Below the pieces are notes generated by a model. That model worked only from the letters and a program-made list of their open reading frames with translations. It had not been told where the DNA came from and made no database searches. A stretch of DNA of 63,931 nt, counting the filler, from Bigelowiella natans CCMP2755 (Eukaryota; Protista; Cercozoa): assembly GCA_000320545.1 (NCBI GenBank). It is 6 parts of 6 records of this genome, joined end to end, with 100 filler letters (N's around TTAATTAATTAA, not from the genome) between each part and the next. Parts side by side here need not be neighbours in the genome. Positions count along the whole stretch, not along the records: positions 9,246 to 34,834 come from ADNK01002147.1; 5 more parts are not named here. One strand, written 5' to 3'. This document shows positions 25,050-28,790 of the stretch, in pieces. The position numbers and the translations under genes were made by a program. Positions within the stretch are counted from its first letter, which is position 1. Each line of letters begins with the position of its first letter.

Positions 25050-26156
25050 TGATAATCATTCCATCGTTTTTCTTATTATCGAAATGCGAAGAGACGAAAA
25101 CCCCCATGGTTGTGTTAACGGGGGAGTTGCTCCTGGATACTGCATGTTCCTGGCGAACAGTGTCGACTGCTGCGAGCTGTTTTGAAAGCAAATAAGCTAG
25201 AAACATCGAATCTAATGTAGCACACATAGACCGAATCACGGAACAATATGTACGCATGCTGGGCGCGTTGCGTACTGACGTTATAGCGCATGCACATGCG
25301 ACAACATATATGGGCACAGCAGCGCGCCATGGCCTTATTTGCGCTAGACTAGTAGAGCGTATCGTACGCGCGTGTATATGTACACATACACATGTAGGCT
25401 AGATTGCACAAATTGTATTAGGGAGAGTATTTGAGAAGATAACAATGTTGTAATAAAGATTTACTAGTTCATTCATTACGCCCGTTTCACATATAGCTAG
25501 ATACGCTAGATTAGAGAACAAATAAATGGCGGCACGCAGTATAGCAGACCTTCAATCGCGCACATTGTTAACAATGCCTTCTCGTCACGAGTCCTATGGC
25601 TTCTACCGCGCCGATCAAGACACTCGCTTGGTTGCGTTGTGCTAAGGGCTGTCTAGATGTGCATGCATGCATGATGCGAAGAATACTAGAACACACGGTA
25701 CGCATAGCATGTTGCAATTACACCTCAATTAATTAGAGACATCATCATTACTAGATTACCCAGGTCAACCTTACTAGCATGTTTTGACTTAATGCAACAT
25801 GCTGCATCACATAACGGTCGCAATAGCCGCCATGAGACCAAAACCTATCGAGAAAGCAATGACATCATACGAAAACACTATACTATCCTCTTTTTCTTGA
25901 CACCAATTAGATGCATGGCCGTAAGACGCATTTTTATCGCCACCGCCTTTTGGACTACATCGGCTTTCTACGCCAAGCAGTCCTTTGGATTCGTAAGATA
26001 CAGCGGGGTCCTGGCAAACAAATATTACGCATTTCCACATTTCAAATTGGCAGATGATGATGATGATGATGATGGTGATGATGAGACGGCAGCGCATGCA
26101 GACAAGATATGCCTTGGTTTTTTATGTAAATGTATTCGTTTCTGCGAAAATTGCTG

Positions 26157-27604
26157 TCATTCATTGAACCCAACAAACTGTGTAGTGAGTACTAAAAGAA
26201 ACCATAGAACAACACCCAACAAGACCTTGGTTGTTCTGTGGGGCTTTGACCGACACAACAACAACAACCAAGATCTTTCAAAAAAACCACAAAGTAGTAT
26301 TTCGCGGTCCGTCTTCTTCGATCCCAGTCACCACAACCCCCTTAATATTTGTTTTGCTTCCTTCCCAAACTAGCAAGACTTGTCGTTATTATCATCATCA
26401 TCATCATCATCATCATTACTCATTACCATTCCTTTGACGAGCTCATGGCCTAGGGCTATACTCACCCAGAACTTGTGAACGATAATAGCAAACGCAATGA
26501 CGCCAGCCCGTGTTCCCTGAGACAGCAGATGTTGGTAAGTGTTGAAAATTGGAAACAACATACTGCAGTACCATTATGTGTAGAGCAAGGAGCTCAGCCT
26601 ACAAGCACAGTCGCAATGGCCAGTGCACAAGCATCTTACTTACTACCTTTGAGGAGCTAATTGCAAACCCGTCGAAGACTGCGTGGCAACTGATGAAGCA
26701 GATGTACGTCAATAGTACTAGCAAATTTAGAAACATATAAATAAATAAATATATATATATATATATATATATTTAATTATATTTCATCATTATCATCTTC
26801 TGTTGGTAGCACATATACTGCCCCTTCCCTAGATTTCTATGAAACCAGAACGTCGTGTGCGCACGGAAGCTACTGGCTGGTCTTGGAAGCAAACCCACGT
26901 TCATGCTTTCACGCTCTCATCTTTTCGCGCTGCTCTTTACATACCTCATCAGGAGCACAGCGATGACGCTTTTTGCGCGACTGGCGGTTTCGTCTATGGT
27001 ATGCACGCAGGTATGACCATCAGAGTGGCCTCTCATAGTAGAAATAGCCTCAAAGTCCATGTAGAGGAAGGTCCCGCAAGCGACGGATTGTACGATAAAT
27101 GTCATCATATGGTATTGGCTTATTTGGAACGCAGCAGACACCAGCAGTGCGATGGGGGAAGTGATAATGAACAATGACGCCAAGACCATGTTTACGCAAT
27201 GTATCCATAGGTTTTTGGGTTTGTCCACCGTGCGGCTGCTGCTTCCCTGCTCCATAGAGGAAGGCGATTTTAGCTCGGTGGCGTCAACTCTTCTACCATT
27301 GCTGTTCCTTTTCGTTAGCCTTTCTGATCTCTTGGTGCTTGCCATATCAAAAATCACCATCGACGAGAATGTCAACCCCACGAGGAAGGGGACCACCTGT
27401 GATCCAGCACACAATAATCTTGTTATTGCCCATGTCATCATCGCTCAACTATATGATGAAGGGCTAGGAGATGTGTTACACATGTGGTCGTACACGTTAA
27501 TATGCACAAGTTTATATTCGTAATGTCAATCTATAAGCAAAGCTAAGTAACATCATAACGCTGATAATGATACGGCATAACACCCATGATGTGTCCACCC
27601 ATCC

Positions 27605-27687
<83 letters not shown>

Positions 27688-28138
27688 ATTCATATACAAA
27701 CACACATGGTTGCTGTACAGGGTAGTCGGTGACGACGTCGTTCTTTCGAACGTAAGTTGTAAAATGGTCCATGGCTGAGTCGAGCATGTGGCAGAGTGCC
27801 ACTCCCAGGAACAACCCAGCGCTATGTGCGTTCCCCAGCCTCTAATGATTTAGGTGATAATGACGAAATATAAATTGATTCGAACACAAAAATCATGCAA
27901 CGCTTGTGACATCAATCTCGCCCACGTACATCTGCTGCAGCCACCGCAGCACATGTCTTACCTGGAATCGTTCAGAAACTCTCACCAGGCTCATCGATAG
28001 GAAGAATCCACCAACCGCCGAGATAAACATCAGGACTGCGTAGACGATATACATCTCGAAGTCACTCGAAGAATCAGGCTGTGCTTCTTCGAGCTGTGCT
28101 TCGAAGCCTTCCCTGTAACCATAGCCAGGCTGGCTCAT
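26157..28138 (-). CDS. ZIP (Zrt/Irt-like) divalent metal transporter with non-canonical order of transmembrane segments
   Basis: TM2 GLFLGVALCHML, TM3 YPVVPFLVG, TM6 LFIITSPIALLV, TM7 QSVACGTFLYM, TM4 CHAVFDGFAI, TM5 IIVHKFWVSIALG and TM8 KVLLGVVLWF, found in that genomic order. Confidence 0.85.
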
Positions 28139-28790
28139 CTTCGGAAATTGAACACGGGCGTCGCGTCAAGCAGAGAGATATTTAATGAGAAGAGGACTGA
28201 AAATGACGTGTCGTTCCCACTTTACGCCCTGCAATTTTCCAAATATGTCCAGCATTTCTTGTCGTTCTTGCCCCATGGCCTGACTTCCTTATATCTCGGA
28301 CCATCAGAGCTCACGGACTCGCACTTTCGGCCTTCGGACAAAGCGCGGGACCGAACGAACGGATGCGAGAATCTCTCGAGGCTCTCCGAATCTCTCATGT
28401 CCTCTACATCCTCATCCGAACGTCCAGATCATAGATGATGGATGTAATTTCCGGTGTTCCGGTGCACTATTTTAGGTAATTTCATGGCCTGGCTAACCAA
28501 GAAAAGCTCTTCAAATGCTCTTCAATTTGTGTCTTTTTTGGTCATTTCCGCCAAAACAAAGCGCTGTTCCAAGCACAACGTGGCTCAGGTGAAAATGTTC
28601 CCGGTCGGTGAATTTGATTAGAGTGTTCGACTACGTCGACGGAGCCTTTTAGGCGGCTTTTAGCAAGTTTCCCGTCTATTTTTGGATGTCGCAATCATGA
28701 AATAGCATTGAGTTTAATGATGTTGTGCAAAGCACGTAACGCCCATCTTCAGATCCCAAGTTGTCACATCCCCCCCAACTATCCCACACG
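28139..28790. promoter_or_regulatory. Putative bidirectional promoter between ZIP and AMT transporter genes
   Basis: 652-bp head-to-head spacer, microsatellite-free, with repeated TTCCGG/TCGG words. Inferred from positions. Confidence 0.45.

What the first reader, a model, noticed from the sequence alone, without database searches (positions are those of the whole stretch)
26157..27396. Scrambled or permuted ZIP transporter: TM6-7 hairpin encoded before the metal-binding TM4-5 hairpin
Seen: in transcription order the gene encodes TM1-2-3, then TM6-7 (26945-27246), then the TM4 exon (26647-26717), the TM5 exon (26427-26516) and the TM8 exon (26157-26235). Each segment is present once, and no other recognisable gene here is out of order. 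Established: ZIPs run TM1-8 with HxxxE/D-G in TM4 and H in TM5. Inference, three models. (A) Out-of-order exons: 27297-27396 (ends phase 1), TM4 (1 to 0), TM5 (0 to 0), 26945-27246 (0 to 2), TM8 (2) all join through GT-AG sites into a canonical 313-aa ZIP, while the same exons in genomic order clash in phase at three junctions; this needs trans- or back-splicing or DNA unscrambling, and the 50-nt intron 27247-27296 was chosen post hoc. (B) A real hairpin-swapped protein 1-2-3-6-7-4-5-8, which is topologically consistent and reachable with alternative sites such as AAAG|PHRTTK. (C) A local block swap in the allele or the assembly.
Basis: partly seen in the sequence, partly recalled or inferred. 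Interest (0 to 1): 0.87.

Follow-up and report, generated by a model that had tools for sequence, protein, structure and literature searches.

The report
Naturally hairpin-swapped ZIP metal transporter
This Bigelowiella natans gene is spliced in the ordinary collinear way, yet it encodes a ZIP-family metal transporter whose membrane helices run 1-2-3-6-7-4-5-8, a rearrangement shared by every chlorarachniophyte relative found and, as far as I could find, not described before.

Summary
On the minus strand, the TM6-7-like hairpin is encoded before the metal-binding TM4-5 hairpin.

RNA contigs from two studies show one ordinary six-exon GT-AG transcript in genomic order. It encodes a 362-aa ORF identical to JGI model Bigna1/78516 (P0007).

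- The "TM8 exon" (26157-26235) lies inside the last intron. The real TM8 is in exon 25759-26010.
- The 50-nt intron is not spliced.
- TM4 starts at the end of exon 3.

The swap is a family trait, not a local accident:
- An intronless paralogue in the same genome has the same order.
- So do homologues from Chlorarachnion, Lotharella, Norrisiella and Gymnochlora, and one from a eukaryotic metagenome bin.
- Pfam Zip and an HMM I built from 115 canonical ZIPs both map all members as HMM TM1-3, TM6-7, TM4-5, TM8.

An AlphaFold2 model matches BbZIP (Z 13.7). It aligns about 50 fewer residues than a canonical control, which is one hairpin.

Model B (a real swapped protein) is supported. Models A (out-of-order splicing) and C (misassembly) are rejected. 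Transport activity and the 3D positions of the swapped hairpins are inferred, not shown.

The parts
27962..28159 (-). Exon 1. The RNA contig reaches at least 28159. The CDS starts at ATG 28138. Encodes the N-terminus and TM1 (MYIVYAVLMFISAVGGFFLSMSL).
   Evidence: RNA contigs X15 and X17. Joined ORF. Family HMM positions 4-39.
27717..27841 (-). Exon 2. Encodes TM2 (AHSAGLFLGVALCHMLDSA) and the DYP start of TM3. The donor position is ambiguous by 2 nt (GT at 27718-27717).
   Evidence: Joints 27841/27962 and 27394/27717 with GT..AG ends. Canonical HMM positions 40-104, iE 4.5e-9.
26945..27394 (-). Exon 3, one continuous 450-nt exon. Encodes TM3, a basic loop, the TM6-like and TM7-like helices, a His-containing loop and the N-terminal half of TM4.
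   Evidence: A single piece in both RNA contigs. Its translation matches P0007 residues 102-250 at 100% identity.
27034..27216 (-). The displaced TM6-TM7 hairpin (P0007 residues 161-221; motifs FIITSPIALLVS and ACGTFLYMDFEAI).
   Evidence: Pfam Zip HMM 233-286 (E 0.005 and 0.0019). Canonical-ZIP HMM 175-221 (iE 8e-4). Helices 161-189 and 196-221 in the AF2 model.
26646..26689 (-). Exon 4. Encodes the C-terminal half of TM4 with the metal-site motif C-H253-AVF-D257-G258.
   Evidence: Joints 26689/26945 and 26515/26646. H253, D257 and G258 are invariant in the family.
26427..26515 (-). Exon 5. Encodes TM5 (AFAIIV-H279-K280-FWVSIALGHEL). The usual TM5 glutamate is replaced by Val.
   Evidence: Pfam Zip HMM 168-229 for residues 233-293. 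H279, K280 and W282 are invariant.
26011..26426 (-). Last intron (416 nt, GT..AG), flanked by (GAT)n/(ATC)n microsatellites.
   Evidence: RNA contig records join 26427 directly to 26010 (table 8). Tandem repeats. No family similarity.
25759..26010 (-). Exon 6. Encodes a 45-aa cytoplasmic loop and the real TM8 (about 25810-25914), then the stop at 25807-25809 and the start of the 3' UTR.
   Evidence: RNA contigs and raw RNA reads. Family HMM positions 254-315, iE 3.7e-11. F348, G351, F352, A356 and A359 are invariant.

Best explanation
The locus is an expressed nuclear gene of the chlorarachniophyte alga Bigelowiella natans (JGI model Bigna1/78516). It has six collinear GT-AG exons and encodes a 362-aa member of the ZIP (Zrt/Irt-like, Pfam PF02535) metal-transporter family.

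In this protein the two central helical hairpins have changed places in the chain. The order is TM1-TM2-TM3-TM6-TM7-TM4-TM5-TM8. The rearrangement is in the protein itself, not in RNA processing or the assembly. It is shared by both paralogue clades of a small family found in chlorarachniophyte transcriptomes and genomes and in one unnamed metagenome bin. It therefore most likely arose once, before those genera diverged.

Inference on structure and function: all three new connections (3>6, 7>4, 5>8) are long loops on the cytoplasmic side, so each helix keeps its canonical orientation. The protein can then fold into the usual eight-helix ZIP bundle, with the TM4 His/Asp and TM5 His at the metal site, and work as a divalent-metal (probably zinc) transporter. 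Its chain crosses the transport/scaffold domain interface five times instead of three.

Inference on origin: the simplest route is a tandem duplication of the TM4-7 block followed by loss of the first TM4-5 and the second TM6-7. That amounts to a circular permutation of the inner four helices.
For: Transcript:
- Spliced RNA contigs from two studies (X15, X17) join 28159-27962, 27841-27717, 27394-26945, 26689-26646, 26515-26427 and 26010-25759, all with GT..AG ends.
- The joined ORF is 362 aa and is identical to P0007, which is jgi/Bigna1/78516.

Family membership:
- P0007 scores 44.9 bits against Pfam Zip, with a cut-off of 35.1.
- The paralogue P0001 scores 78.5 bits.

Helix order:
- Fragment scans of four members place hairpin 1 on Zip HMM 231-287 (E from 2.7e-5 to 0.66).
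- They place hairpin 2 on HMM 167-232 (E from 3.8e-9 to 7.7e-6).
- An HMM built from 115 canonical ZIPs hits 8 of 8 members in the order HMM 1-100, 175-221, 104-168, then 236-255 where the TM8 hit was reported (5 of 8).
- Swapping the hairpins back in silico restores one collinear domain. The best-domain score rises from 44-52 bits to 83-94 in four members and to 67 in a fifth.

Family-wide:
- The intronless paralogue at G000:C907 has the same order.
- So do homologues from Chlorarachnion, Lotharella, Norrisiella, Gymnochlora and a metagenome bin.
- There are 40 invariant columns, including H253, D257, G258, H279 and K280.
- The tree separates the family from canonical ZIPs at 100/100, with B. 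natans in both sub-clades.

Topology:
- The 6>7 and 4>5 loops are 5-7 aa.
- The 3>6, 7>4 and 5>8 loops are long and mostly rich in Lys/Arg or His/Cys.

Fold:
- The AF2 model has pTM 0.63 and eight long helices.
- The ten best Foldseek hits are all BbZIP.
- VIA-align gives Z 13.7, rmsd 3.3 A and 178 of 233 residues against 5tsa; the next unrelated hit has Z 7.8.
- A canonical control model aligns 226 of 233. The deficit across four BbZIP entries is 48-54 residues, which is one hairpin.

Context: the metagenome-bin member P0012 sits between two cobW/COG0523 genes, a family of zinc-linked GTPase chaperones.
Against: - No transport assay or solved structure exists.
- I could not read model coordinates, so the spatial positions of the swapped hairpins are inferred only from the aligned-residue deficit and from motif conservation.
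- The AF2 model is of middling confidence (mean pLDDT 64) and rests on nine sequences.
- For P0007 itself, the TM6-7 hairpin match is weak on its own (Pfam E 0.002-0.005; own HMM iE 8e-4). The in-silico unswap gave no single-domain gain for P0007 or P0008, which have long loops.
- TM5 lacks the usual glutamate (HKFWVS), so the metal site is non-standard. The nearest canonical relatives (HKGSAAFALG) lack it too.
- The RNA runs are labelled RNA only as a guess, although their GT-AG joints can hardly come from DNA. Raw RNA reads (X21) were too few to show joints.
- DNA contigs break at intronic microsatellites, so no single DNA contig spans the gene.
Confidence: 0.8

Rival explanations
1. The helices are misassigned. 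The hairpin after TM3 is not homologous to TM6-7: it only looks like it, through hydrophobic composition or ZIP internal pseudo-symmetry. On this view the protein is a divergent ZIP relative with an ordinary or unrelated architecture.
For: Single-sequence scores for the first hairpin are modest (Pfam E from 0.002 to 0.66 in three of four members). No PDB sequence hit was found with the family profile. Sequential structure searches give low TM-scores (TMt 0.34-0.44; no ZIP cluster by structure in the Atlas).
Against: - The same HMM interval (TM6-7) is hit in 8 of 8 members by two independent profiles.
- Signature motifs are conserved: the S/T-P of TM6 and the (A/C)GTF..E of TM7.
- Unswapping restores a collinear full-length match in five members.
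- The published ZIP symmetry pairs TM6 with TM1 and TM7 with TM2, not with TM4-5 (PMC13192868). Pseudo-symmetry therefore does not explain the match.
- Low sequential TM-scores are what a permuted fold should give.
Confidence: 0.08
2. This is a degenerate or neofunctionalised paralogue. The rearranged protein is made but no longer transports metal; it might be a sensor, a regulator or a decaying gene.
For: The TM5 glutamate is missing. The P0007/P0008 clade sits on a long branch (2.47). Part of the last intron appears in the RNA contigs at about a quarter of exon depth. If retained in the mRNA, it would truncate the protein before TM8.
Against: - Intact ORFs are conserved in at least five genera and in two paralogue clades, with 40 invariant columns that include the TM2, TM4 and TM5 histidines.
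- The nearest canonical ZIPs also lack the TM5 glutamate.
- The gene is expressed in independent studies.
Confidence: 0.08
3. One reading: a canonical ZIP is produced from out-of-order exons by trans-splicing, back-splicing or DNA unscrambling.
For: None from the tools.
Against: - Both RNA contigs are collinear and give an open frame.
- One required exon (26157-26235) is intronic and unrelated to the family.
- The required 50-nt intron is not spliced.
- The intronless paralogue has the same order, so no splicing is needed to explain it.
Confidence: 0.01
4. One reading: a local block swap peculiar to this assembly or allele.
For: The short-read DNA contigs of run X4 break at intronic microsatellites, so none spans the whole gene.
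Against: - Spliced RNA contigs from two other studies bridge every block in the same order.
- Fourteen DNA runs hold 98% of the stretch's words.
- The order is the same in the paralogue and in other genera.
Confidence: 0.01

Closest known systems
ZIP (Zrt/Irt-like protein, SLC39, Pfam PF02535) transporters, structurally typified by Bordetella bronchiseptica BbZIP (PDB 5TSA, 5TSB, 8CZJ)
   Same: It scores above the Pfam Zip cut-off. It has eight TM helices, and TM2, TM3, TM4 (HxxxDG), TM5 (HK), TM6 (S/T-P), TM7 (GTF..E) and TM8 (GFG) motifs are all present once. The best structural matches are all BbZIP (Z 11-13.7).
   Different: The chain order is 1-2-3-6-7-4-5-8 instead of 1-8. The chain crosses between the transport domain (helices 1/4/5/6) and the scaffold domain (helices 2/3/7/8) five times instead of three; the domain definition is from PMC9873690. 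The His/Cys-rich loops sit at 3>6, 7>4 and 5>8 instead of one loop at 3>4. The TM5 glutamate is absent.
Bacterial ZIPII-like proteins of about 256 aa, labelled 'zinc transporter 1/2/3' (e.g. P0006; P0053 of Desulfocapsa sulfexigens)
   Same: These are the nearest canonical sequences found: 31% identity over TM1-3, and the same HK....ALG form of TM5 without the glutamate.
   Different: Canonical helix order, short loops, prokaryotic. They are separated from the permuted family by a long branch with 100/100 support.
Proposed ancient circular permutation in the origin of the ZIP fold (4-TM ancestor, duplication, rearrangement, fusion; PMC13192868)
   Same: It shows that rearranged helix order has been invoked for ZIP evolution, and that hairpin-level blocks behave as modules.
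   Different: That event is hypothetical, ancestral to all ZIPs, and yields the canonical 1-8 order. Here a modern family departs from that order.
Natural non-circular permutations of other folds (e.g. the HK97-like capsid fold of phage BPP-1, PMC3863775)
   Same: The same fold is reached with segments in a different chain order that a simple circular permutation cannot explain.
   Different: Those are soluble or capsid proteins. This case is a polytopic elevator-type membrane transporter.

Membership tests
ZIP family (Pfam PF02535 Zip) | Whole-protein score above the Pfam gathering cut-off (35.1 bits) | tested here: met
   P0007 44.9 bits, P0008 55.8, P0012 70.1. Paralogue P0001 78.5.
ZIP family (Pfam PF02535 Zip) | Eight transmembrane helices with N- and C-termini on the same (outer) side | tested here: inconclusive
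   The AF2 model has eight long helices. Loop lengths and Lys/Arg counts fit the canonical orientation. The sidedness itself is inferred, not measured.
ZIP family (Pfam PF02535 Zip) | Metal-site motifs: H-x3-D/E-G in TM4 and H(-x3-E) in TM5 | tested here: inconclusive
   TM4 H253, D257 and G258 and TM5 H279 are invariant. The TM5 glutamate position is Val/Ala, as in the nearest canonical relatives.
ZIP family (Pfam PF02535 Zip) | Canonical collinear helix order TM1 to TM8 | tested here: not met
   The HMM intervals hit, in protein order, are 1-100, 175-221, 104-168 and (where reported, 5 of 8) 236-255, in 8 of 8 members. Pfam fragments agree.
ZIP family (Pfam PF02535 Zip) | ZIP fold (BbZIP-like eight-helix bundle) | tested here: inconclusive
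   VIA-align gives Z 13.7, rmsd 3.3 A and 178 of 233 residues against 5tsa, well above the next unrelated hit at Z 7.8. A canonical control aligns 226 of 233. No non-sequential alignment was possible.
ZIP family (Pfam PF02535 Zip) | Divalent-metal transport activity | not testable with these tools
   Needs expression and uptake or complementation assays.

The most novel reading that the evidence does not exclude
A whole, conserved and expressed family of elevator-type ZIP transporters, so far seen in chlorarachniophytes and one unnamed metagenome bin, works with a non-circularly permuted chain (1-2-3-6-7-4-5-8). If so, the ZIP fold and its transport cycle tolerate rewiring of the links between the transport and scaffold domains. 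The family probably arose by duplication and partial deletion of the inner four-helix block.
Probability: 0.7. Interest if true: 0.75.

Novelty: new variant of a known kind. Interest (0 to 1): 0.7.

Why it matters
Natural permutations of polytopic membrane transporters are rare, and non-circular ones rarer still. ZIPs are elevator-type transporters in which helices 1/4/5/6 slide against helices 2/3/7/8. A natural variant that exchanges the 4-5 and 6-7 hairpins changes which loops tether the moving domain.

That gives a ready-made test of how much chain connectivity matters for folding, membrane insertion and the elevator movement. It is also a living example of the block rearrangements proposed for the origin of the ZIP fold.

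There is a practical point as well. Collinear profile searches and sequential structure aligners under-score such proteins. Pfam bits were about 34-59% of the canonical control's (44.9-78.5 against 132.1), and Foldseek TM-scores fell below 0.45. Similar permuted members of other transporter families may therefore go unnoticed.

Tried and rejected
- Pfam on raw ORF pieces of TM1, TM2, TM4 and TM8 gave nothing; they are too short.
- The family profile found no PDB sequence hit even at E 10.
- An alignment-based search of the 5.8-billion protein set returned only three known members, because the word filter saturated. The family's true range beyond what phmmer found with exon 3 is therefore not settled.
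- I looked for cobW/COG0523 genes next to the B. natans ZIP genes, as seen in the metagenome bin. There are 34 matches in the genome but none on contig C1590 or C907.
- The Atlas structure search gave no ZIP match at any useful TM-score. That is uninformative for a permuted fold.
- Raw RNA reads (X21) gave only 26 reads, mostly in the 3' exon, and no joints.
- In-silico unswapping gave no single-domain gain for P0007 or P0008.
The joined ORF was built only inside a script and was never typed into a search. It proved identical to database protein P0007, which one search returned, and that id was used from then on.

Full report
**What is there.** The piece is a contig (G000:C1590) of a 91-Mb eukaryotic genome. 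Source names attached to identical proteins identify the organism as the chlorarachniophyte alga Bigelowiella natans (jgi/Bigna1). The finding lies on the minus strand.
- a TM6-like FIITSPIALLVS and a TM7-like ACGTFLYMDFEAI in the long ORF 26917-27441;
- a TM4-like CHAVFDGFAISS at about 26650-26690;
- a TM5-like IVHKFWVSIALG at about 26430-26510.

Pfam places the first on Zip HMM positions 233-286 and the last on 168-197. The gene order is therefore the reverse of the profile order.

**The transcript.** Logan contigs of two runs from different studies (X15, 2016; X17, 2019) hold one spliced molecule. It joins 28159-27962, 27841-27717, 27394-26945, 26689-26646, 26515-26427 and 26010-25759.
- Four joints are listed with CT..AC ends on the plus strand, which is GT..AG on the gene strand.
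- The fifth joint (26427 to 26010) follows from adjacent record positions in table 8. Its splice-site dinucleotides are visible.

Joined in a script, these exons give a single 362-codon frame from ATG 28138 to the stop at 25807-25809. A whole-library phmmer search with exon 3 alone returned a 362-aa protein, P0007, at 100% identity. P0007 equals the joined ORF residue for residue and is JGI model Bigna1/78516.

The mRNA is therefore ordinary and collinear, and its product has the helix order 1-2-3-6-7-4-5-8.
- The 'TM8 exon' (26157-26235) is inside the last intron and has no family similarity.
- The 50-nt intron is not removed.
- TM4 begins at the end of exon 3.

The true TM8 (FSIGFGLMAAIATVM) ends the protein in exon 6.

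**Is the order real, or a local accident?** The same genome has a paralogue at C907 as one uninterrupted 312-codon ORF (P0001, Bigna1/90890). It scores 78.5 bits against Pfam Zip and has the same order. So do transcriptome proteins of Lotharella, Norrisiella, Chlorarachnion and Gymnochlora, and a gene on a eukaryotic metagenome-bin contig.

The nine-sequence alignment has 40 invariant columns. They include the TM2 histidines, the TM6 proline, the G-T-F and Glu of TM7, H253/D257/G258 of TM4, H279/K280/W282 of TM5 and the G-F of TM8.

A tree separates the family from canonical ZIPs at 100/100. P0007 groups with the Chlorarachnion protein at 100/100, and B. natans is present on both sides. By parsimony, the swap predates that duplication. 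Misassembly and allele-specific rearrangement are therefore excluded.

**Statistical support for the assignment.**
- Fragment scans of four members against Pfam put the first hairpin on HMM 231-287 (E 2.7e-5, 0.0019, 0.0036, 0.66).
- They put the second hairpin on HMM 167-232 (E 7.1e-7, 7.7e-6, 3.8e-9, 1.3e-8).
- I built an independent HMM from 115 canonical ZIPII-like proteins retrieved with the nearest canonical hit, P0006.
- All eight permuted proteins match it as HMM 1-100, then 175-221, then 104-168. A weak TM8 hit (HMM 236-255) follows in five of them.
- Exchanging the two hairpins in silico restores one collinear domain over HMM 1-221. The best-domain score nearly doubles in four members (44-52 to 83-94 bits) and rises to 67 in a fifth.
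- Other reorderings that leave TM6-7 ahead of TM4-5 after TM3 gave no gain. Placing TM4-5 directly after TM3 gave a partial gain (HMM 1-168). P0007 and P0008, with long loops, do not chain.
- The published internal symmetry of ZIPs pairs TM6 with TM1 and TM7 with TM2 (PMC13192868). It cannot explain a TM6-7 match at this position.

**Topology and fold.** The 6>7 and 4>5 loops are 5-7 residues. The 3>6, 7>4 and 5>8 loops are 15-61, 16-20 and 33-54 residues long. Most of them are rich in Lys/Arg or His/Cys. This fits a cytoplasmic location for all three new connections and the canonical orientation of every helix.

An AlphaFold2 model of P0007 built from the nine-sequence alignment has pTM 0.63 and eight long helices with pLDDT of about 70-90.
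- The ten best Foldseek hits in the PDB are all BbZIP, but with low global TM-scores (0.34-0.44).
- VIA-align gives Z 13.7, rmsd 3.3 A and 178 of 233 residues for 5tsa, against Z 7.8 for the best unrelated chain.
- As a control, a model of the canonical P0006 (pLDDT 90) aligns 226/233, 217/224, 225/230 and 232/238 residues of four BbZIP entries. P0007 aligns 178, 169, 174 and 178 of the same entries.
- The constant deficit of 48-54 residues is the size of one hairpin.

That deficit is what a sequential aligner must drop if the fold is kept and two hairpins are exchanged in the chain. This is indirect evidence, because I could not read coordinates.

**Mechanism (inferred).** The protein most likely folds as a ZIP bundle and moves a divalent metal, probably zinc, with TM4 His/Asp and TM5 His at the transport site. 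The TM5 glutamate is missing, but it is also missing in the closest canonical relatives.

In BbZIP the transport domain is helices 1/4/5/6 and the scaffold domain is helices 2/3/7/8 (PMC9873690). The swapped chain therefore crosses the domain interface five times rather than three, through long flexible loops.

One family member lies between two cobW/COG0523 genes in a metagenome bin. This is a weak hint of zinc homeostasis, and B. natans shows no such linkage.

The simplest origin is a tandem duplication of TM4-7 followed by loss of the outer halves. No relics remain in the introns.

**Comparison and novelty.** By score and motifs this is a ZIP. By helix order it fails the canonical architecture. 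B. natans also keeps a GufA-like ZIP gene with its motifs in canonical order. Full-text searches found no report of a permuted modern ZIP, only the proposal of an ancestral circular permutation. The gene model itself is public, so what is new is recognition of the architecture. I rate it a new variant of a known kind.

**Limits.**
- There is no functional or experimental structural evidence.
- The alignment is shallow.
- The family's range is known only from one exon-based library search.
- The RNA runs are labelled RNA by guess.
Searches used exon references or the database id P0007.

Noticed in passing
window 26091-26377 and 27420-27585: RNA-run contigs also cover part of the last intron, at about a quarter of exon depth (X15 10 against 35; X17 13.9 against 55.2). 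In X15 only, they cover part of intron 2 (depth 4.8). Other introns have zero depth. This could be partial intron retention or DNA carry-over. Retention of the last intron would end the protein 18 residues after TM5, before TM8.
   Followed up: partly
L005/L006/L007, positions 1579-2781 and 4327-6048, around the gene at 3001-4050: In a eukaryotic metagenome bin (GCA_977009605.1), the intronless permuted ZIP P0012 is flanked on both sides by cobW/COG0523-family genes on the opposite strand. The arrangement suggests a zinc-homeostasis cluster.
   Followed up: partly
G000, many contigs: B. natans carries a large cobW/COG0523 complement: 34 exon-level matches on more than 15 contigs. None is on the contigs that hold the permuted ZIP genes.
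   Followed up: no
L001 (G000:C1220:3107-6331), plus strand, about 1100-2400: A GufA/ZupT-like ZIP gene with introns has its TM4 (IGIHNLPEGLA), TM5 (IGIHNIPEGLC) and later helices in the canonical order. The genome therefore holds both canonical and permuted ZIPs.
   Followed up: partly
window 26053-26084, 26391-26416, 26723-26772, 27615-27682: Every intron of the gene except the first and the fourth carries a microsatellite: (GAT)10, (ATC)9, (AT)19, and (CT)16 followed by (CA)18. These are the places where the short-read DNA contigs break.
   Followed up: yes
P0005 (Lotharella globosa, UniRef A0A7S4DGF1): This 182-aa partial family member has an unrelated Cys-rich insert of about 60 residues between TM4 and TM5, relative to its close homologue P0002. 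It looks like a retained intron in the transcript model.
   Followed up: no
P0010: A 531-aa protein made of nine tandem repeats of about 57 aa matched residues 106-132 of exon 3 at E 7e-6. This is a repeat-driven false positive, not a relative.
   Followed up: no
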